Notes: generated by a model from the letters alone, not told the origin. Positions 2,729 to 37,600 are shown, counted from the first letter of the stretch. The stretch: DNA of 64,000 nucleotides from Sminthopsis crassicaudata (GCF_048593235.1 NC_133622.1:243850055-243914054), one strand, 5' to 3'. Translations and numbers: made by a program.

Positions 2729-3501
2729 GAAATTTAACTTTTAATGGAAAAAAAAAAACAAACCATTTATTTGAAGTTGGTTTCTGGGGCTTTGAGCCCC
2801 CTTCCCTCTCACTTTCAAAGGATGGATCCATGGGAATGCCTATTACTCTCAGTGCCCACCTTCTCTAGAGTCAGGCTGATATATGGAGTCCTGTTTCAAG
2901 CAGGACTCAGTCCTCCCTTCAGGCCTCCAGAGCTTAAGAGAGTAGTCTCACTAACGAACCCATCCTGGCCCATCATTCTCCCTGGAAATTTCAGAAAAGC
3001 AAATTTAGGAATAAGCCCATGGACGTCCAGATGAAAAGGATCAGAGATGTCACCTGATCTAACCCTCTCTCATTTTATAGATGAGGATTCTAAGGTCCAG
3101 AAAGGTTAATGACTCAGCTGAGGTCACACAGGGGCTAGAGCTGGGACTTGAATTGTTTGACTTCAGAACCAGTGCTTCTTACACTAAGGTAGACTGTTTG
3201 ATGTCAAGACTAAAATCCTAACAATGAGAATCATTTCAAAGTGGAATAAGTTGCCTCTGAAGATAGTGGGTTGTCCCTTATTTAAAGTCTTCAAACAAAA
3301 GCTACTTGTTCATTTTTGAGGTGTCTTATCTTTGAGGTTTCCTATTTAGATATTAATTGGACTAGATGGTCTCTGAAGTCCTTGCTTGCTCTGAGCCTCA
3401 TGATATGGGTCTTTCCATGACTTTAGATATGTTTAAGTGATGTGATCTCCTGGACTATGTCTCTAAGACTCAACTTCTCCCTTTCTTCTGGGTATTTGAA
3501 G

Positions 3502-3949
3502 GTGGACCATGGTAGCAGAGAGGAGCAGGCAAATAAAAATGAAACATTATTGACCCAGCCAAGTGGAAAGAATGAATCAGAGACTGATCTGGATAGCCCC
3601 CAAAGCCACATCGAATCCCAGAAAGTGATAAAAGATAAAACAACTCATCCACCGACAGACTTTCCCACAAAGTCTACTACCACTGAACCAACTACTCAAT
3701 CCCCTACAGAGCTCCCCACTCAACCAACTTCCCAGCCAACCACTCAGGCCCCTCCTGAACCAACTTGCCTGATTCCTGATATTTCCTGCTCTGAGATCAA
3801 GACTCAAGAAGCAGAGAACATGTTGGGAGAAGCCATGACAGATTTCTCCCTGAAACTTTACCGGACCTTCTCAGCAGTGAAGAAAATAGACTCCAATATG
3901 GTCTTTTCCCCATTCAGCATTGCAAGCCTTCTCACCAACATCCTCTTAG
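3502..3949 (+). CDS. SERPING1: C1 inhibitor coding exon 2 (Thr/Pro-rich mucin-like N-terminal domain and start of serpin domain)
   Basis: Acceptor tttgaag|GTG, QPTT-like repeats, two Cys seven residues apart, serpin motif [13 protein letters not shown], donor TTAG|GTAAGG (phase 1). Confidence 0.93.
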
Positions 3950-4671
3950 GTAAGGGTCTTACCTGTAGACTCCCCATCATAGCTGGCCCTGGTATCCTCG
4001 TGACTGTCCTGATCACAGCCACCCTAAATGGGCTTACACTCCCTGCTGCCATAACAATATGGCTCCAAGAGGAAGTCTTCTTAGATAATGGTCACTGTCC
4101 CAGGTGCTAACCTATTCCTGCTAATACCTTTATTCTTCTGACTAGTTTCTTGAGCACCCCCTGTGTGTAAGGTGCTTTTCAAGGATATACCAAGATGCCA
4201 AAATGTTATCCTTGCCCTTAAGCCCACAGTCTAATAGAGGAGAAAAGCCATGTACACTAGTATGTGTATGCATACATATACTCTATGTAGTGAGTACGTT
4301 GTAAGTGGAACAGAGTATTTTAATCAGAAGAATGAATGGTTGGTGAGGGCTATTTCTTGAAGAATGAAACAATATTGCTAACTTGGAAGGAAGAATAAAA
4401 TTTAAATAAAGACAAAATGTGGAGTGAGGAGAGAATATCATATAGAGAGTAAGAGTGCTGGATATGAGTTCAAATCCCAGCTTTGCTACTTTTTAGCTAT
4501 GTGACTGAGAATGTTATGGATGGCTTTCTTCTTGAGGTGGAGCTTAAAAGAGATGTCTTTCTTTCAAATCAAGTTTGTGATTAGTGAAAGACGAGCCAGA
4601 GAGAACAAAGAATAGAGGTAAAAAGAATAATTAAGAGCCTGTTTCAATAGACTCAGGAAAAGGTGATGAAT

Positions 4672-9783: not shown

Positions 9784-11730
9784 GTGAGTATAAAGGGTTT
9801 TGCCAGCAGCCACCTTGATCTTCAGTCACCATCTGGGGTCCTTTCTGGATTTCCTGTTTTCATAGACACAAAAGAATCTTTTCTGCTTCAACCACTCTTC
9901 CTCTTTCTCAGAGCTCTCTCCTTTTCCTTTTTCCTACTCTACTTTTTCTAACTTTCTTCTGTCCAGTAGTTCCCTGAGGAAGGCAGAGACCTCTGTACTC
10001 CCTTTCCAGCAGCAACTGAGTTCACACGAGCCACATTGAGACTCAGTATCCCTTTTTTGGCCAAACCATTAGGGAACCCAGAAAGCTGAGAAAACTCTGT
10101 GTCTATGTGGCACATGTGGATACATATGTGTGTACAGGTGGGTGGTGAATTCCTCAATAGAATGAGACTAGCGAGAACAATTCAGACCTTCAAAGTAGCG
10201 CTTTTCCTCTACGAGATACAAAGATTATGACCCTCATTTTGGAGATGAGAAAATTTGAAGTTGCTTATCCACAGACACACAGAACTTCAGAAACTGCCCC
10301 AGAAGTGAGGTGAGACATATCTCAAAGCCTGGCAGGTTCTGGTTCATTATTACAGAATGTTGTGTGCCCAGCACTGTCCCAGGTGCTATTCAGGCTACAA
10401 AGAAAGCATGAGACACAATCCTTGCCCCTCGAGGAGCTTCCCTTCCCTTGGAGAAATCAAGATTCACACATGAATAGAGAACAAGAAGCCAGTGTCCATT
10501 TTATAGCAGACAAGTCCTGCAGGTAATCAAAACCCAGAACTGGAAGGGACCTCCTAAGCTATCTCATCCAAATTCCTCACTTAATAGATGTGGAAACTCA
10601 TGTCTGGGAAATGAAGAGACTTGCCAAAGGTCATACTCGGCAGGAAGTACAAGAGTTAGAATCTTCTGTCTCCCAAGCCCAGAGTATTTCATTTCTATGA
10701 CGCTTCTTCACTATGACCAGTTGAAATATAAAGTGAAAAGGTTATCACCCCCATTTTGAAGATGAGAAGACTGAGCCTCAGAGAGTTGCTCATGGCCATG
10801 GCAATTGGTCAGGGTTGGAGCTTAGATTAAACCCAGTTTTTCCAATACTCTTTCTACCACCACTTATCCCACCGCCCACAAGTGGAGAAACATTGCAAGT
10901 GTGATTGGGTGTTGGGGCAGGGAGTAGTAGCCTAGAAATGCAGCAGAGAGGCTCAGTGGAGAGAGAGCCCGTGCAGTGGGAAGAGAAGACAGGGTTTAGT
11001 CAGAGAAGATGAATTTCTAGAGGAAGGGATGTCATAGATGGCTTCTGAAGAATGACTAAGAATGACGCCCCAAAGCGAGTCTTGGCAAATGGTTGTTCCT
11101 CCTGTGGAGACAGAGAAATCACTGAGTGGTATCCTGGCTTGTCCACACCTTCTCATGGCTTTCAGATTCATACAAATCCTTTAAGATTTACAAAGCACTT
11201 TCTTTACTACAACCAGGTAAGGTAGGTGGTACTGGCAATGTTGTCTCTATTTTACAGATGAGGAAATTACGCCTTAGTGACAGCAAGTGACTAGCCCAGT
11301 ACTAAATGGCTAATTAATGACTCAGCCCCAGACTCTCATACACCCAGGTTTTATGTGCTGTCCCTTGTGGCCACCATGCTCAACATGCTTACCATGCAAG
11401 CTTTATTCCTCCCCAGAATTCTCAGAAGCTTTAGAGTTCATGTTTTCCATCACCTGAGGAACTTCTCTCTATTTGGAGTCAAAGGATCTGTGTTTGATTC
11501 TTCTCTCTGACGTTTGGGTGACTTTGGGGAAATCATTTAATTTCCTGAGCCTGAGTTTCCATTTGTGAAAAGTGAGAGAATTGTGCTAAATGACCTCTGA
11601 GGTCCCTCCCAAAGCTGGTTTTCTCATCCTATGACCCTGTGACTCACAAGGCAACTTGGGACTCAGCAAGGAAGCTCTCAGGCCTAGTTGGCAATGGGAA
11701 GGCTGAGGGGCCCCATCTCTTGGTCCCCAG

Positions 11731-29060: not shown

Positions 29061-31709
29061 CAGTACCAACCTGCACCGGCCGCCTTCGATTTGTCCCTGC
29101 AGCAGTTGGGTTTTGGTGTTGGAATCTGCATCCATTTAGCATGGATCCAAGTGTTATCCTGAGCCTGACCTCAGTTCCTAAGTCACCCACTATTAATTAC
29201 CCTGTGTGGAGAAGTGATATGGCTGCCAAAAAACAACAGACCTATGGGTGTACTGTTGGGGATGGGGAGGTGAGAGGTTGCTATACCATGTGTGGTTAAA
29301 TGAAGGTCAAAATCTGTAGTGGTAAAGGCACTTCCCATACAAGGGTCCCTAATTGTCCCAGAACTTTTAAATCAAGAGGGGGAGAAAATGGACTGCCCAT
29401 TTTCTTTTCTGGCAAATTCAGAACAAGATTGGATGATATAGAGGAGAACAATAGCTCAAAAGGAGCCCCTTGCTTGGGACAGGGAGAGGAACACAGAAGG
29501 AAGTGTGGCTGCTCACCCCTGTCAGTCCACCCCAGTTGTTCCTTCGCTGGGTGCTCAGGGAAGAAGAGAGAGAAGGAAGCAGTCTTGTCCCCAAACATAG
29601 GATCTCAGATTATAGAGAGACCTTAAAGATCATCTGTTCTTAAGGGTTCAGAATTGGAAGGCACCTGAGAGTCACGTTGCCTACCTGTATTTGGACAAGT
29701 CCCTTTGCTTCCCAGCATACCCAATTAATGGTCATGCAGCCTTTGCAAATGAAGACCTTCGGAGGTAGGAAACACTTTATAGACGAAAAAATCAAGGCCA
29801 TCAAATTGAAAAATATGAGAGTCAAGATTTCAACCCAGATTCTCTAACCCCACAATCAATGCCCTTGAAAACATGAAGAGTAATTCCTTCAATTCAGAAA
29901 CCCTCGAGGCATGGATTAGTTGTAGTAAGAGGTGGGGAGGACCCCCCCACAAAGTGTTTTGGTCTTTTAGATGTTCACAGAATTGCCCAGGCCCTGATCA
30001 AATCTCCCATGATGAAAACAGGACCAGGCAGAAGAAGCCCATAGGCTATGGTGTGTAGCAGGTGCTGTATAAATTACTTGAATTAAAATTCATTCACTGA
30101 ACCACACATGATTTCTTAGCAGTGTTAAAAAAATGGCAGTTTGGACATGGTTTGCAAGGAGAGCTTTAGATCAGATACGGATAGGTGCCATCTCTGGTCA
30201 CATGGACCTTAGTGGCCAAGGATGAAATTCACATAATGGCATATAGCTCAAATGAACCCTCTGAGAGCATCTTCATCTTGCTTTACAGTTGAAGAAACTA
30301 AGGGAAGGCCCTTATGCTTGGGCAGACAGAATCTAGGATACTAGAGATTTCATGTAGATCCAGAGGCTCAGTGTGCCTGTTATCATCCCCTTCCTTCCCA
30401 AGAACTTCCATTCTCCGTGTATCCATTGTCTTTCAAAGCCCTCTTGGGCATCCCAAGCATTGCACTCATCCACCGGGTGGTCTTTCAGGAGCAATGTGGC
30501 TCTGAGACATTGTCTTCATGTGACTTATGTCTGTTATAACTTTGCCATCCCTCACTGGCCTCCATTTCTGTTCTTTAACCTTAAGCCCTGAATAAAAAAG
30601 ATTGGGTTGGGTTCATTTGATTTCTAGGAGAATGTAACCTGATGAAGACTTTGAGCTATGAGAGCAGGGAACTATTTTTTGCCTTTCTTGGAATCTCCAG
30701 CACTTAGAGCACAGTGACTGGCACGTAGGAGGCATTTATTATTGCTTATTGGCTGAAGAACAGAAGCNNNNNNNNNNNNNNNNNNNNNNNNNNNNNNNNN
30801 NNNNNNNNNNNNNNNNNNNNNNNNNNNNNNNNNNNNNNNNNNNNNNNNNNNNNNNNNNNNNNNNNNNNNNNNNNNNNNNNNNNNNNNNNNNNNNNNNNNN
30901 NNNNNNNNNNNNNNNNNNNNNNNNNNNNNNNNNNNNNNNNNNNNNNNNNNNNNNNNNNNNNNNNNNNNNNNNNNNNNNNNNNNNNNNNNNNNNNNNNNNN
31001 NNNNNNNNNNNNNNNNNNNNNNNNNNNNNNNNNNNNNNNNNNNNNNNNNNNNNNNNNNNNNNNNNNNNNNNNNNNNNNNNNNNGTCTCTCCTGAGACCCA
31101 GTGACACTACAATTTTGAGCTACTCCCAATTTCTGCTGGTTGTGGGTAGACTCTTTACTGAATAATCGTTTTAAAAAACCTAAAGTAGTGTGTGTGAGGT
31201 GGTCAGAGGCAGCCAGGTGGTGAAAGTGGATAGGGAGAACTCTCAGTAAGGAAGACCTGAGTTCAAATAGGATTTCACTAGCTCTCAAAATCAGATAACA
31301 GCACTTACCTCTGGAGGTTGCCCTGAGGATAAAACGAGGTGCTTTTTACAAAACTTAAAGCACAAAACGAAATGAATATCCGGAGAATCAGCCGGAATCA
31401 AGAGGGACCTCAGAGCTGCGCTCACATGTTCCCAGATTTGAAGGCTTACCTGGATTCGGGAAGTCACCTCCAGCCCAGAATGCCGGGACTCAGACCGGTG
31501 ATCACAAAGTATACAACACCTTGGGGGCAAAATTCCCCCTAAAAACTTTTGGGCTGAAGATGGGTCTCCTACTAGCAAAGGAGCTCTGCTGCCCCCTGGT
31601 GGGCGTCAATGTTGACAAGAACCCCTCAAATGAGAAGCTCCTTCTGACTTGGGGGCTTGGGTGAAAGACAGGGCAAATCTTTGCACTTAGCTGGGTTTTT
31701 TTCCCCATT

Positions 31710-32548: not shown

Positions 32549-32638
32549 TCAGTCCCAGCCGTTGTCCTTCACCATGTGCGACATTTCAATGATGTATTTT
32601 CCCTCCTTGTACTTCTGGCTTGTCTCAAAGGCTTGCTC
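32549..32638 (-). CDS. YPEL4: Yippee-like 4, last coding exon
   Basis: ccag|[32 protein letters not shown]. Confidence 0.96.
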
Positions 32639-32846: not shown

Positions 32847-32955
32847 ATATTTCCAGCCCAAGGTGGTTTTGCAGCTCTCACAGAAGATGTCAGCCACAGA
32901 GTGGAGGCCAGTGAGCAGGAGGCGCTGTTCAGCTGGCCCACAACCCACGTTGACC
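32847..32955 (-). CDS. YPEL4: Yippee-like 4, coding exon 3
   Basis: acag|G...TAT|gtgagt, 109 nt, [36 protein letters not shown] (second CxxC). Confidence 0.96.
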
Positions 32956-33354
32956 CTGTCTCGGGAAACAGCCAGCAAAGCCAGGCAGGGGAGGGGTGTT
33001 TGTTACTCAGGTCAGCCCCCCTGACCAACCCAAAGGGATCCTCCCCAGAAGGATCTAACCCCAGAAATCTGGAGAAACCCATCATTTCAGAGCCACCCCC
33101 TTTTTGGTTGATCCCTGGGGATTGCTTTCTCCAATGATGTGCTATCGGCATCTTAGCCCTCCCCAGGGACTTATTCCTGGGAGGATCACGGGCCAGGCTC
33201 CTCTGCTAACAGGGTGCAAAGAGGGACCTTTGTCCCACCGGCTGGGTAAGGGAGTTGCAATACCTGTTTGCTTCCCTCTGATTGCTAGGGGGGAACTTGA
33301 CCCTGAAGCCCCTTGTTCCACAGGGGGAAAAAATAAGGAAAGAGGGAGACTCAC

Positions 33355-33398
33355 ACAGAGTTAAACAGGTAGGCCCGGCCATGGCTCCCCTGGAAGGA
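33355..33398 (-). CDS. YPEL4: Yippee-like 4, coding exon 2
   Basis: ccacag|TCC...GT|gtgagt, 44 nt, SFQGSHGRAYLFNS. Confidence 0.94.
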
Positions 33399-33606: not shown

Positions 33607-33747
33607 CTTGGAGATGAGCTCATCGTGCTTGGCCAGGTGTGCCCGGCAGTGAACACAGCTGTATGTGCGATGACAGCGGGGCAGGTAACTGCGGAAGGTC
33701 TTGGTGGGGAGGCAGGCAGGGCCCGGGCCGGGCTCGCAGCTGGGCAT
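33607..33747 (-). CDS. YPEL4: Yippee-like 4, first coding exon from AUG (exon starts at 33931; ACG extension from 33852, see findings)
   Basis: [47 protein letters not shown]|gtacgc. Joined CDS 141+44+109+90 = 384 nt = 127 aa. Confidence 0.95.
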
Positions 33748-35799
33748 GACGGGCTGGAGGGCAATGCCCTGCCGGGCTGGGGGGGCTGGCGCAGTGCAGC
33801 CCCCACACAGACGATCGCAGGTGAAGCAGCGAAGCAGGTTGGCTAGAGCCGTGTTTCAGGACAGGAGAAATGTGGGGGGGCTGCCCGACCAGGGCCCCCC
33901 CAGACGAGAACCAGGTAGAAATGAAGGTCACCTGGGAAGAGGGGAAGGGGTGCATGAGGAGAGCACTGAGGCAGTGGAAGACTGGGGGTGTCTGGTTTCC
34001 TGGTTACCCTTCAGCCTCTCATGCTGTCTCCTGATACCAAAGACTAGCCCTTTTCTAGGAGTTTGTTTTGTTTTGTTTTTCCCCGTCCCCTTGATTCTAA
34101 TTCTGCTCTGGTGAGCTCAGCAGCAGTTCCAGCCTGCTGGCATGAGTCAGGGAGGCAGTATTTGGGGCGGGGATGGGGAGGGTAGCAGCAGCCTCCATCA
34201 TCTTTCCCTGAAAGCTCTCTAATAAGATGAAGGATGCTCAGGAGCCCCGTCATCTGCCAGTGTTTTCTTGGCCGTCCATTCATCTGTGCCGCTCGTACTT
34301 ATTGCTGCATCCAGTTGCACACTTGAGCCTTTGAAAGTTGGGGTGCTTCCGTTTCTTTCCTTGGCTCCCCCCCTCCTCCCATTTGCAATTCACAACATTC
34401 CCCACAACACCACCAGTTCCACGTGAGGCTGGGAAGGTGTGCCAAGACTTGGAGAAGATAGGATGTGTTCTGGGGGGGGAGCGGCACCGAGCTGCAAACA
34501 CACACTCAGAGCTTTCCTTCTTTCCCACTGTTTCAGATTGTGGAGTCCTCCTTTCACCACTAGGAGGGAGAACTTCGCAGCTTCCCAGCTCCCCCGTTGC
34601 AAGGCTCACCTCTGGGGATGCAGCACAGCGAGCGGCCCCCTTGATGGCCGCCCATTCCAGCCTAGCACAGCACTCTTAGCCAAGGAGCTACACTCTAAGC
34701 CTGTGATTGATTTCAGGAGCATTTGGATCAAAATTACTCCTTCTTTTTGTCTTGAGTGACTAATGTTCATCAGGCACCCAGAACCGGGAGCCTCTCCTCC
34801 CTGCTCTGCCCCCACAATCCCTCACCCACACCCATCCCTCACTCGTGGGAGCATGTGCGCAGAAAACTGGGAAGACTCAATAAAGCCCCCATAACAGGGC
34901 GATGGCTACAAGCCTCTTGTCCTAGGAAGGCTTGTTCGGGAGGCTCATTGAAGTTTCAGACAAAGGAGAGGGTCTCTCTTTTTTTTTTTTAAGTTTGTAG
35001 TTAGACCACTTCTATCCAAAAGCTTCCTTCCATATCCCATGGTCCATCTGGGTCTGGAGGGTGTCGGGGCAGGCTATGTCTCCGAGCACGAGCTTTGGCA
35101 AGTGCTCCCAGATCCGAATGGCCCAGGTGAGAGACTTGTTGGCTCCTGGTTATGCTGATGTTCCAGAAGCACATGACCAACTTAATCACAGGATACAGCT
35201 TCTTTGGCCACAGAAACTCTTAAAGACCAGAGGGGGCTCAGCCCCCCCTGGGTGGATGGAGTACCCACAAAAGGACAGCTCTACTGAGGGACTGAAACAG
35301 GAACGAGCCAAAATGGCCTTAAAGGCAAGGGAAGAGCTACATGACTGGGATCAAGAAGGCTTCTGGGGAATGGTTTTGGAGAGACACACTGGTTTCCAGT
35401 GAAACTCCAACTCCACATGGGTGAAGAGCAGGAAATCGGGAACGTCTGCTGTTGGCTGGTCTGGGCATTGGCAGATTTTGGCCTCGGCTCCTCGCTCTTC
35501 TGGGCTCGTCCAAAGGGCCTGCGGAGGGCCAGTGCAGGTGGACATCGATCGGAGGGATACAGGTTTGATGCAGAGAAATGCTCCAAGCTTCAGACCCAGC
35601 CGGAGCAGAATGGAGCTCGCCCTTCTCTCAGGAGCGTGCCTCCCACTTCTGCACCCCAAACAGCCTCCGGAAGCTTTCTCGTCCTCTGCAGGAGCCAGCC
35701 TTGCCTCCCGGCTCACTGAGCCCGACTTCTTCCCTCACTACATATGATCCAGGTAGGAAAAGCTGCCGCTGCGTTCAGGGTGACATTGTGGTCCAGCAG

Positions 35800-37600
35800 A
35801 GCGCCGGCAGCTTAGCCTTCGGCCCCTTGTATTGGGCTCTCCTTGCTGCCCTTAAGCCGGGCTCTCTCGATTAGCCGCTGTTCTGCTCGGAGAAAGCTGG
35901 CAGCCCTGTGGAGCGCCCAGACCTTCTCCTCCAGCCAGTTCCAGGCTAGCCCCCGCCCCCAGGAAGGTGGAGACAGCCCCGAGCATCAGAGGATAATGGA
36001 AAAAGTGACAAGAATAGGGATGGGGAGACTGCATCTATTCTTCCCCCTCTCAAATAACAGCAAGGAAGCAGGTTGGAAACAACAACAACAAGAGAGCGAG
36101 CCAAGGATTTTCTGCCCTCCTAGGAGACGGGGCTGGCCTTGGAGGAGGTGGGGAGGAAGGGAGGGAGGGGAGCAGGGGGGGATCCAGCCGCCCCGATAGC
36201 CTCCCAGGAGCGCTCTAGGACCAGATGCTAATCCCGTGCCTCTTTGGGGGAAAAAAAAAAAAAAAAGCTGGGGGGGGGGAGGAGAGCGCATCAGAGAGCT
36301 TCTCGTCAGCCCCGAGATCTCAGCCCCCCCCCCGGGTGATTTCGGGAGCTTGAGACCATTCACTCCCCCCGCACCCCAACGATAACTTGGAGTGCTGTCC
36401 ACCGGGGGGGGGGAGGCCGGGATCTGGAGGGTCCCCCCCCAAGTGGCCGCGATCTCTTCCGCCAAACCATAAGCAGCACCGATCGCCCCCGCAGCGAAAG
36501 TTGGGGGGGGGGGTCGGGGACCAGACAGCCCGGGGAGCTGCGGAGCCGGACGGAGCTGGCGAGATGCCCCCAGGCAGGCGAGGGGCGCCGCGGAGGAGAG
36601 CGAGGGGCGCGGGAGGGAGCGGGCAGGGAGCGAGAGAGGACAAAGGACGGCCGGATGAATAATGCATTTGCCAGGAGGATCAAAGCGCCGCAGAGCGAGG
36701 AGATTGGAAAAGGAAAACAATCGGGTGGGAGCTGCCCCCTCACCTTGAGGTCTGCGCCCGAGATCTCCGAGTGTGTGTCTCTCACGCTCCGCTCTTCCTT
36801 TATTTGTGCGTCCGCCTTCGATCGGGAAGGGGATGCGGGTCCCAAAGGGCCCGGGCCCGGGGCGCGCGGCCGGGGCCCGATGGAGCGCCGGGGACCCGGG
36901 GTGGGGGCGGGGGTCTCTCCTGCTCGGGCTCTGTCTGGGGGTGAATGTGGCTGGATGTTGTGGAGCTGCCTCATAACACTGTGAGTCATCCAGCCCCCGG
37001 CCCCCCCCCCTCCCACGTCAGAGCGGGGCTGGGAGACACAGGGGGCGGGCCGGGAGGGAGGCAGGGAGGGGGCAGAAACTGGGGGGCCGATGCGGGAGTG
37101 CAGCAGGGTGGCGAGGGGGCAGGAGCACGACTGCCGGCGCCATGGCGAGCAGGGAGCCGGGCGGAGCGCGCGGCCGACGGGGACGCCTCCGAACCACACG
37201 GGGTGACCGGGGAAGGCAGAAGAGAGAAGGAGAGAGAAAGGTGCCACGGAGGGAGGGAGGGAGGAGAGCCGGAGCGTGATCCATTCCCACGTCTCGGTCC
37301 TGACCGCGGTCCTGACGCAGGCCGGAGAAGGGCGGACTCCCGGGCTGGGGACGGCCCAGGGAGCCCCCGGCTCGCTCCCACCCCCCCGCGCGCCCCTTCC
37401 CAGGGAGCCCCTTCCCAGGGAGCCCCCAGCCAGAGCGACACCAAAAAGCGATCAACTCGCCAACTCTTCTCACTTATGGTCCGCCCGGGGGCGGGAGGTC
37501 TCGGATCCGCGGCAGCCGCTGACTCTTACCCCCATCGCCCCGACGCCTTCTCAACCCCTAGACTTAACCTCCATCGAGTTTGCGATGTGAATCACGCGGG
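35800..37600. promoter_or_regulatory. YPEL4: CpG island / YPEL4 promoter, with candidate non-coding first exon ending at 36744 (-)
   Basis: High GC and CpG content. Minus-strand donors CAAG|GTGAGG (36743) and GGG|GTAAGA (37529). TSS not determinable. Confidence 0.6.

What the first reader, a model, noticed from the sequence alone, without database searches (positions are those of the whole stretch)
33748..33858. Non-AUG (ACG) initiated, Cys-rich 35-codon N-terminal extension of YPEL4
Seen on the - strand: TGA AAC ACG G. An in-frame stop (33858-33856) is followed two codons later by ACG (33852-33850) in optimal Kozak context (A at -3, G at +4), then 35 open codons into the annotated ATG with no intervening ATG: (M)[38 protein letters not shown]. 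The open frame begins essentially at the ACG, and the peptide carries a CxxC-x3-CxxC cluster. This gives a 162-aa isoform against 127 aa. Established: ACG can initiate, and I recall comparative work proposing ACG extensions for eutherian YPEL genes, so this may be marsupial confirmation rather than a first report. Inference: the Cys cluster is either a second metal site or an S-acylation/membrane anchor.
Basis: partly seen in the sequence, partly recalled or inferred. Interest (0 to 1): 0.75.

Follow-up and report, generated by a model that had tools for sequence, protein, structure and literature searches.

The report
Known ACG-started YPEL4 extension, marsupial copy
The marsupial YPEL4 gene carries the 35-codon, cysteine-rich front extension starting at a non-standard ACG codon that was predicted for vertebrate YPEL genes in 2011; comparison across amniotes shows it is under protein-level selection, so the finding is correct but not new.

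Summary
On the minus strand there is TGA (33858-33856), AAC, then ACG (33852-33850; A at -3, G at +4), followed by 35 open codons into the YPEL4 ATG (33747-33745), with no ATG in between.

An open frame of this length is expected by chance about 55% of the time here. The evidence is therefore comparative:
- In 35 amniote YPEL4 loci (dasyurids, monotremes, ruminants/cetacean, squamates, sea turtles), the same TGA, the same ACG and a nearly invariant peptide are present.
- Variable sites by codon position are 8/2/22.
- dN/dS is about 0-0.05, as low as in the adjoining known coding sequence.
- Birds keep the frame with a 3-nt insertion.
- YPEL1 shares ACG-GCT-CTN and the core ALxxxLxCFxCxR.

Ivanov et al. 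2011 already listed YPEL1, YPEL2 and YPEL4 as non-AUG extensions conserved in all vertebrates. GENCODE v35 annotates those of YPEL1 and YPEL2 but not YPEL4. This is therefore a marsupial copy of a known prediction.

The proposed role of the cysteines (metal site or S-acylation) remains untested, and only C9 and C12 are invariant across birds and YPEL1.

Side leads are a strongly conserved leader upstream of the ACG and AUG-started copepod Yippee proteins with a similar N-terminus.

The parts
33932..33933 (-). Splice acceptor AG at the end of the upstream intron; the exon begins at 33931
   Evidence: a polypyrimidine tract followed by AG|G is invariant in marsupial, monotremes, eutherians, lizard, snake and sea turtle. 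Conservation collapses upstream of it and is high downstream.
33859..33931 (-). Conserved non-coding 5' leader of the first coding exon. It holds no ATG in any frame and has in-frame TGA codons at 33930-33928 and 33858-33856.
33873..33902 (-). Invariant UGGGGGGGC (33902-33894) and GCCCCCCCA (33881-33873), a possible 9-bp G-C hairpin ending 20 nt before the ACG
   Evidence: every pair is kept in 10 sequences but none covaries; the folding energy is not unusual (z -0.31). The structure is unproven.
33856..33858 (-). In-frame TGA that closes the frame two codons upstream of the ACG
   Evidence: The same TGA is present in 35 of 35 non-avian amniote loci that keep the frame. It is absent in birds.
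33850..33852 (-). ACG, the proposed initiation codon (A at -3, G at +4)
   Evidence: It is invariant in all YPEL4 loci, birds included, and in camel YPEL1, together with the following GCT CT.
33748..33852 (-). 35-codon N-terminal extension: (M/T)[34 protein letters not shown]
   Evidence: Coding-type conservation: variable sites 8/2/22 by codon position, binomial p 4.5e-5, dN/dS 0-0.05. It is 95% identical to eutherian protein models.
33835..33837 (-). In-frame CTG at codon 6 (A at -3, C at +4), a rival or additional start
   Evidence: Codons 2-5 upstream of it are kept at the amino-acid level with synonymous changes, which favours the ACG.
33745..33747 (-). Annotated ATG of the 127-aa YPEL4 (G at -3, C at +4)
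   Evidence: It matches the marsupial 127-aa protein P0123.
33607..33747 (-). Canonical coding part of the same exon (47 codons), ending AAG|gt
   Evidence: It is 100% identical to marsupial YPEL4 proteins P0006 and P0008.
33354..33398 (-). Coding exon 2 (SFQGSHGRAYLFNSV), flanked by ag and gt
32847..32954 (-). Coding exon 3 ([10 protein letters not shown]...LGWKY), flanked by ag and gt
32549..32638 (-). Last coding exon ([10 protein letters not shown]...DNGWD plus stop).

Best explanation
This is the marsupial (dasyurid-like) orthologue of the conserved non-AUG N-terminal extension of YPEL4.

Proposed mechanism: scanning ribosomes meet no AUG in the conserved exon leader. A fraction initiates with Met-tRNAi at the ACG, which sits in optimal Kozak context (A-3, G+4), and makes a 162-aa protein. 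The rest scan on through an AUG-free stretch to the ATG and make the 127-aa protein. The result is two forms with the same C-terminus.

Shown: the extension peptide is under strong purifying selection across amniotes. Its first ~14 residues, (M)ALxxxLxCFxCxR, are shared with the paralogue YPEL1.

Inferred: that the ACG is the start, that both forms are made, and what the extension does. My preferred guess for its role is an N-terminal targeting or anchoring motif, with S-acylation of the Cys residues in a hydrophobic/basic context. A self-contained four-Cys metal site seems less likely.
For: - Anatomy of the stop, ACG and open frame.
- Exon boundary: the ACG lies 79 nt inside an exon whose acceptor is conserved.
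- Conservation: 35 amniote loci have exactly 36 open codons closed by the same TGA, an invariant ACG, and only 6 distinct peptides from 18 distinct DNA sequences.
- Coding pattern: variable sites by codon position are 8/2/22 (p 4.5e-5). NG86 dN/dS for marsupial against platypus, ruminant, lizard, snake and turtle is 0.00-0.035, compared with 0.025-0.081 for the adjoining known CDS.
- Birds keep the frame through a 3-nt insertion.
- Codons 2-5 show synonymous changes: Leu as CTA, TTA, CTC or CTT; Ala as GCC or GCA; Asn as AAC or AAT.
- Camel YPEL1 has ACA ACA ACG GCT CTT GCA TGC, with the same A-3 and G+4.
- Literature: Ivanov et al. 2011 list YPEL1, YPEL2 and YPEL4 as extensions conserved with their non-AUG start in all vertebrates. 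GENCODE v35 annotates the YPEL1 (35 codons) and YPEL2 (33 codons) non-AUG forms. The human YPEL4 reference transcript contains the extension contiguously.
- Identity as YPEL4: exact matches to the marsupial protein and Serpin-YPEL4-CLP1 synteny, as in birds.
Against: - There is no direct evidence of translation here.
- The 2022 re-analysis did not recover YPEL4 in its phylogenetic or Ribo-seq sets, and GENCODE v35 did not annotate it.
- The open frame alone is expected by chance in about 55% of shuffles.
- Synonymous divergence in the extension is lower than in the CDS, and the first 10 codons are 89% invariant at the DNA level. Some of the conservation is therefore nucleotide-level.
- One tortoise assembly has a +1 frameshift in a C8 run.
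- One eutherian lineage (L012) shows relaxed constraint, with dN/dS 0.2-0.6.
- An in-frame CTG at codon 6 could also start translation.
- The AlphaFold model was uninformative.
Confidence: 0.82

Rival explanations
1. The stretch is conserved as an RNA or DNA regulatory element of the 5' leader (structure, protein-binding site or enhancer). The in-frame open reading is incidental and no functional extended protein is made.
For: The non-coding leader just upstream (33931-33859) is also strongly conserved, with invariant G7 and C7 runs. The first 10 codons are 89% invariant at the DNA level, and dS in the extension is about 0.5-0.8 of that in the CDS for marsupial comparisons. The open frame alone is not significant.
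Against: Substitutions have strong three-base periodicity (8/2/22), and dN/dS is about 0-0.05. The bird indel is a multiple of 3. The peptide core is shared with YPEL1, whose DNA has diverged. No unusual folding energy was found (z -0.18 and -0.31).
Confidence: 0.06
2. The extension is translated but starts at the in-frame CTG (codon 6, 33837-33835) or another downstream near-cognate codon. The product would then be about 157 aa.
For: CUG is generally the most efficient non-AUG start (Ivanov 2011). This CTG has A at -3. Leu codons at positions 6-7 are kept in birds.
Against: The CTG has C at +4. Residues 2-5 upstream of it are kept at the protein level with synonymous changes. The ACG with A-3 and G+4 is invariant in YPEL4 and in YPEL1, where positions 6-7 are GTA TTG.
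Confidence: 0.07
3. The extension is reached from an AUG in an upstream exon by alternative splicing, for example into the AG of CTCTAG|CC at 33844-33843, rather than by non-AUG initiation.
For: The 158-161-aa eutherian models P0001 and P0133 begin exactly at Asn5, just after that AG. Bird RefSeq models such as P0037 start at an upstream-exon AUG and read through the extension.
Against: Residues T-A-L-A upstream of that AG are conserved in birds and in YPEL1. The real acceptor at 33933-33932 is conserved. In-frame TGA codons at 33930 and 33858 block any upstream AUG on the normal transcript in all non-avian amniotes examined. The human reference transcript holds the extension contiguously. The 158-aa models are labelled 'partial'.
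Confidence: 0.04

Closest known systems
Predicted non-AUG N-terminal extensions of vertebrate YPEL1, YPEL2 and YPEL4 (Ivanov, Firth, Michel, Atkins and Baranov, Nucleic Acids Res 2011; PMC3105428)
   Same: It is the same gene and the same extension. [quoted passage not shown] The marsupial peptide differs from the ruminant one by one residue.
   Different: Only the species differs. The paper's text does not mention marsupials, and its Table 1 and dataset were not readable here.
GENCODE-annotated non-AUG proteoforms of human YPEL1 (35 codons) and YPEL2 (33 codons) (Fedorova et al., Nat Commun 2022, Supplementary Data 3; PMC9789052)
   Same: These are paralogous extensions of almost the same length. 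YPEL1 shares ACG-GCT-CTN and the core ALxxxLxCFxCxR.
   Different: YPEL4's extension was listed as not annotated in GENCODE v35 and was not recovered in that paper's PhyloSET or RiboSET. After residue ~14 the YPEL1 and YPEL4 extensions are unrelated in sequence.
Other conserved ACG-initiated extensions with leaky scanning, such as WDR26 and DDX17 as discussed by Ivanov 2011
   Same: They share a near-cognate start in good context, an AUG-free interval allowing leaky scanning to the downstream AUG, and two forms with the same C-terminus.
   Different: This extension is shorter (35 codons against a median of 51) and far more conserved than most. For YPEL4 there is no western-blot or ribosome-profiling support in the papers read.
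N-terminal multi-cysteine S-acylation motifs such as those of GAP-43 and PSD-95 (recalled from general knowledge, not tested here)
   Same: Several Cys lie within the first 20 residues, in a hydrophobic and basic context.
   Different: There is no sequence homology and no acylation data for any YPEL protein in the papers searched. This is a functional analogy only.

Membership tests
[quoted passage not shown] 2011) | An in-frame open 5' extension of the annotated CDS without any AUG | tested here: met
   35 codons, with no ATG in any frame from the exon start to the main ATG.
[quoted passage not shown] 2011) | An upstream in-frame stop that excludes an upstream AUG start | tested here: met
   The TGA at 33858-33856 is conserved in 35 of 35 non-avian amniote loci. 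It is not present in birds.
[quoted passage not shown] 2011) | Protein-coding pattern of evolution in the extension (Ka/Ks well below 1; indels in threes) | tested here: met
   dN/dS is 0-0.05 in most lineage pairs, and variable sites are 8/2/22 by codon position; birds have a 3-nt insertion. Exceptions are a +1 shift in a homopolymer in one tortoise assembly and relaxed constraint in L012.
[quoted passage not shown] 2011) | A conserved near-cognate codon in favourable Kozak context at the 5' end of the conserved coding signal | tested here: met
   The ACG with A-3 and G+4 is invariant in all YPEL4 loci and in camel YPEL1.
[quoted passage not shown] 2011) | Direct evidence of translation (ribosome footprints, N-terminal peptide or a larger band) | not testable with these tools
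YPEL4 orthologue (Yippee/Mis18 domain protein) | Sequence identity to YPEL4 and conserved synteny | tested here: met
   The first coding exon is 100% identical to marsupial YPEL4 proteins, and exons 2-3 match exactly. The order Serpin - YPEL4 - CLP1 is the same as in bird loci. The first exon alone gives no Pfam hit, but the full-length orthologues carry PF03226.
Independent tetra-cysteine metal site in the extension | Four metal-ligand residues conserved in position across the family | tested here: not met
   Only C9 and C12 are invariant. C16 is missing in YPEL1. C19 is replaced by P, A or G in several birds. YPEL1 has an extra C5. The structure model was uninformative, with pLDDT about 30 in the extension.
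N-terminal S-acylation (palmitoylation) motif | Cys residues near the N-terminus in a hydrophobic/basic context, with acylation shown experimentally | tested here: inconclusive
   The sequence context fits. No acylation data exist in the papers searched, and acylation cannot be tested with these tools.

The most novel reading that the evidence does not exclude
The N-terminal Cys-Phe motif may not be a vertebrate invention. It could be an ancestral bilaterian module of Yippee-like proteins. Copepod-type Yippee proteins begin with an AUG-encoded MPCNLISSCFFLESPWF, which places C9-F10 in the same register as the vertebrate (M)[11 protein letters not shown] and (M)ALACVLQCFFC. Under this reading, vertebrates kept the module but moved it behind a weak ACG start. 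That would make a minor, membrane-anchored (S-acylated) form alongside the soluble 127-aa form. For YPEL4 this could connect to the red-cell membrane defect of Ypel4-null mice. The conserved G7/C7 leader element might set the ratio of the two forms.
Probability: 0.2. Interest if true: 0.55.

Novelty: already known. Interest (0 to 1): 0.2.

Why it matters
The finding has little value as a discovery. The YPEL4 non-AUG extension was predicted in 2011 as conserved throughout vertebrates, and a marsupial copy is expected.

Its practical value is for annotation. The 162-aa form is missing from the marsupial, monotreme, reptile and most eutherian gene models seen here, and from GENCODE v35 for human. 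Yet its evolutionary signal is as strong as that of the accepted coding sequence.

The extension is still functionally uncharacterised in the literature searched. The Cys-rich, near-invariant N-terminus is therefore a reasonable target for anyone studying YPEL4 in red-cell membrane biology.

Tried and rejected
No splice-junction or expression evidence was obtained.
- RNA structure as an explanation: folding the extension and the leader gave energies no better than shuffles, and no covariation.
- Structure prediction: AlphaFold2 on the 158-aa meerkat model with a 46-sequence alignment gave mean pLDDT 44 and about 30 in the extension. It was too poor for any fold search, so the second job was not used.
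- Pfam on the first exon alone: no hit.
- Word search with the YPEL1 extension: only mammalian YPEL1 isoforms were found, with no YPEL2, fish or invertebrate bridge.
- Amphibian locus: no DNA was returned. Several marsupial assemblies also returned no DNA.
- Profile-profile comparison of vertebrate and copepod N-termini: P 0.002, probability 14%. This is suggestive only.
- Literature searches for YPEL with palmitoylation, N-terminal extension or near-cognate found nothing on the function of the extension.
- The human 158-aa entry (P0129) was seen in a cluster list but deliberately not used.
- The large representative search was not run, because no claim here rests on absence of relatives.

Full report
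**1. Observation**

Read on the minus strand, the window shows TGA (33858-33856), AAC, then ACG (33852-33850) with A at -3 and G at +4. From the ACG, 35 codons run open into the ATG at 33747-33745. They encode (M/T)[34 protein letters not shown], followed by [10 protein letters not shown]....

There is no ATG in any frame between the exon start and the main ATG. The in-frame near-cognate codons are ACG (codon 1), CTG (6), CTG (15) and ATT (30).

The open frame alone proves nothing. With the composition of this leader (66% G+C), about 55% of shuffles keep 35 codons open.

**2. Gene and exon context**

The gene is YPEL4.
- The first coding exon is 100% identical to marsupial YPEL4 proteins (127-aa cluster member P0123).
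- The remaining coding exons lie at 33398-33354, 32954-32847 and 32638-32549.
- A Serpin fragment and CLP1 flank the gene, as in bird YPEL4 loci.
- The window is about 99% identical to the Tasmanian devil locus.

A polypyrimidine tract followed by AG|G at 33933-33932 is invariant in marsupial, monotremes, eutherians, lizard, snake and sea turtle. Conservation collapses upstream of it. The exon therefore starts at 33931 and the ACG lies 79 nt inside it.

**3. Comparative test**

I fetched YPEL4 loci from other species: two dasyurids, echidna, platypus, ten ruminant/cetacean assemblies, ten squamates, eleven turtles, four birds, and one camel YPEL1 locus. No human sequence was used.

In 35 non-avian amniote loci:
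- The frame upstream of the ATG is open for exactly 36 codons and is closed by the same TGA.
- The ACG is invariant.
- Only 6 distinct peptides arise from 18 distinct DNA sequences.
- Variable sites fall 8/2/22 on codon positions 1/2/3 (binomial p 4.5e-5).

Nei-Gojobori dN/dS for the window against platypus, ruminant, lizard, snake and sea turtle is 0.000, 0.034, 0.026, 0.017 and 0.035. For the adjoining accepted coding sequence the values are 0.067, 0.055, 0.047, 0.025 and 0.081.

Birds keep the frame through a 3-nt insertion and have TTALGALLRCFPCERLCGG....

Codons 2-5 carry synonymous differences: Leu as CTA, TTA, CTC or CTT; Ala as GCC or GCA; Asn as AAC or AAT. Translation therefore begins upstream of the CTG at codon 6, and the only near-cognate codon available there is the ACG.

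Camel YPEL1 reads ACA ACA ACG GCT CTT GCA TGC. It has the same ACG GCT CT, A-3 and G+4. The YPEL1 and YPEL4 extensions share (T)ALxxxLxCFxCxR.

**4. Exceptions**

- One tortoise assembly (Gopherus flavomarginatus, L025) has one extra C in an eight-C run, which shifts the frame. Ten sea-turtle assemblies are intact. I cannot tell an assembly error from a real lineage-specific loss.
- One eutherian assembly (L012) resembles the narwhal protein at CGSC. It has five amino-acid changes and dN/dS of 0.2-0.6.
- In birds there is no stop upstream of the ACG. RefSeq-type models such as P0037 start at an upstream-exon AUG and read through the extension.

**5. Nucleotide-level constraint**

- The TGA and the first 10 codons are 89% invariant at the DNA level.
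- dS in the extension is lower than in the CDS.
- The non-coding leader 33931-33859 is also highly conserved. UGGGGGGGC (33902-33894) and GCCCCCCCA (33881-33873) are invariant.
- These two runs can pair, but no pair covaries and the folding energy is ordinary (z -0.31). The extension itself also folds no better than shuffles (z -0.18).

This suggests a requirement around the weak start site, but nothing more can be said.

**6. What is known**

Ivanov et al. [quoted passage not shown]

Supplementary Data 3 of Fedorova et al. 2022 (PMC9789052) shows the following:
- GENCODE v35 annotates the non-AUG forms of YPEL1 (35 codons) and YPEL2 (33 codons).
- YPEL4 is in the list of 28 predictions not annotated.
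- YPEL4 occurs in none of the paper's other supplementary files held as text (13 files were searched).
- The human reference transcript contains the extension sequence contiguously.

Full-text searches found no paper on the function, acylation or detection of any YPEL extension.

The finding is therefore a correct marsupial instance of a published prediction.

**7. Mechanism**

Most likely, a fraction of scanning ribosomes initiates at the ACG in optimal context. The rest scan through an AUG-free interval to the ATG. Two forms with the same C-terminus result (162 and 127 aa).

Selection on the peptide is shown. The start codon, the ratio of the two forms and the function are inferred.

On the cysteines:
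- C9 and C12 are invariant in all sequences examined.
- C16 is absent from YPEL1.
- C19 is replaced in several birds.
- YPEL1 adds a Cys at position 5.

A fixed four-ligand metal site is thus not conserved. This tilts me towards a position-tolerant role such as S-acylation or membrane targeting, but it is untested. The AlphaFold model was too poor to help.

**8. A lead beyond the literature**

Many unnamed 165-200-aa Yippee proteins begin with the AUG-encoded MPCN(L/F)ISSCFF(L/P)ESPWF. The Yippee domain of one of them, P0074, is nearly identical to that of the copepod Tigriopus californicus.

Their C9-F10 lie in the same register from Met1 as in the vertebrate extensions. A profile-profile comparison aligns residues 6-23 with 6-26 at P 0.002, but with only 14% probability. 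A mayfly protein also has a Cys-rich N-terminus (VFCCFRLGQPC).

The motif may therefore predate vertebrates and have been AUG-initiated originally. This is suggestive only.

**9. Limits**

- There is no read-level evidence. I worked beside those places afterwards.
- Amphibian and fish loci were not obtained.

**Verdict**

The finding is already known and of low interest. An annotation gap and two minor leads remain.

Noticed in passing
window 33859-33931 (minus strand), especially 33902-33894 and 33881-33873: The non-coding leader between the splice acceptor and the TGA is almost as conserved across amniotes as the coding sequence. It has invariant UGGGGGGGC and GCCCCCCCA runs that could form a 9-bp hairpin ending 20 nt before the ACG. 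Birds also have a G-run and a C7 run there, with a different sequence between them. There is no covariation and no unusual folding energy.
   Followed up: partly
L025:1370-1520 (Gopherus flavomarginatus, GCA_025201925.1): One extra C in a C8 homopolymer inside the extension shifts the frame, and codon 4 changes from GCC to ACC. Ten sea-turtle assemblies are intact. This is either an assembly error or a lineage-specific loss.
   Followed up: partly
L012:1396-1500 (GCA_949774975.1) and protein P0133 (narwhal): The extension carries five amino-acid changes (FACDRLCGSCAAP...GVALRPV) and dN/dS of 0.2-0.6, while the adjoining CDS stays constrained. Constraint may be relaxed in this eutherian lineage; all four Cys are kept.
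   Followed up: partly
L027-L029 upstream of position 1501; L026:1501; proteins P0037 and P0027: Birds lack the TGA before the ACG. Predicted bird isoforms start at an upstream-exon AUG (MSHGAVM...) and read through the extension, so in birds the extension may be AUG-initiated.
   Followed up: partly
proteins P0057, P0051, P0067, P0074, P0042, P0046 and about 20 more; P0077 (mayfly); P0091 (Tigriopus): Copepod-type Yippee proteins have an AUG-initiated N-terminus, MPCNLISSCFFLESPWF..., that resembles the vertebrate ACG-initiated extension (C9-F10 in the same register). The annotated Tigriopus model appears to lack this first part.
   Followed up: partly
L030 about 10050-10200 (camel YPEL1): In YPEL1 the frame upstream of the conserved ACG is open, with non-conserved in-frame ATGs. 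Gene predictors use these to make variable long 'isoform X' models (P0048, P0069, P0094, P0149-P0155). These probably misplace the start of the conserved extension.
   Followed up: no
window 36400-37500: A CpG-island-like stretch (G+C 0.66-0.75) lies about 3 kb upstream of the first coding exon. It is a likely YPEL4 promoter and non-coding first exon; this was not verified.
   Followed up: no
window about 30750-31100 and from about 37600: Runs of N (masked sequence or assembly gaps) flank the gene region.
   Followed up: no
window 3442-4110 (+) and 46768-47619 (+): A Serpin-domain fragment and a CLP1 exon (CLP1_N and CLP1_P domains) flank YPEL4, in the same neighbourhood as in bird loci.
   Followed up: partly
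   Followed up: no
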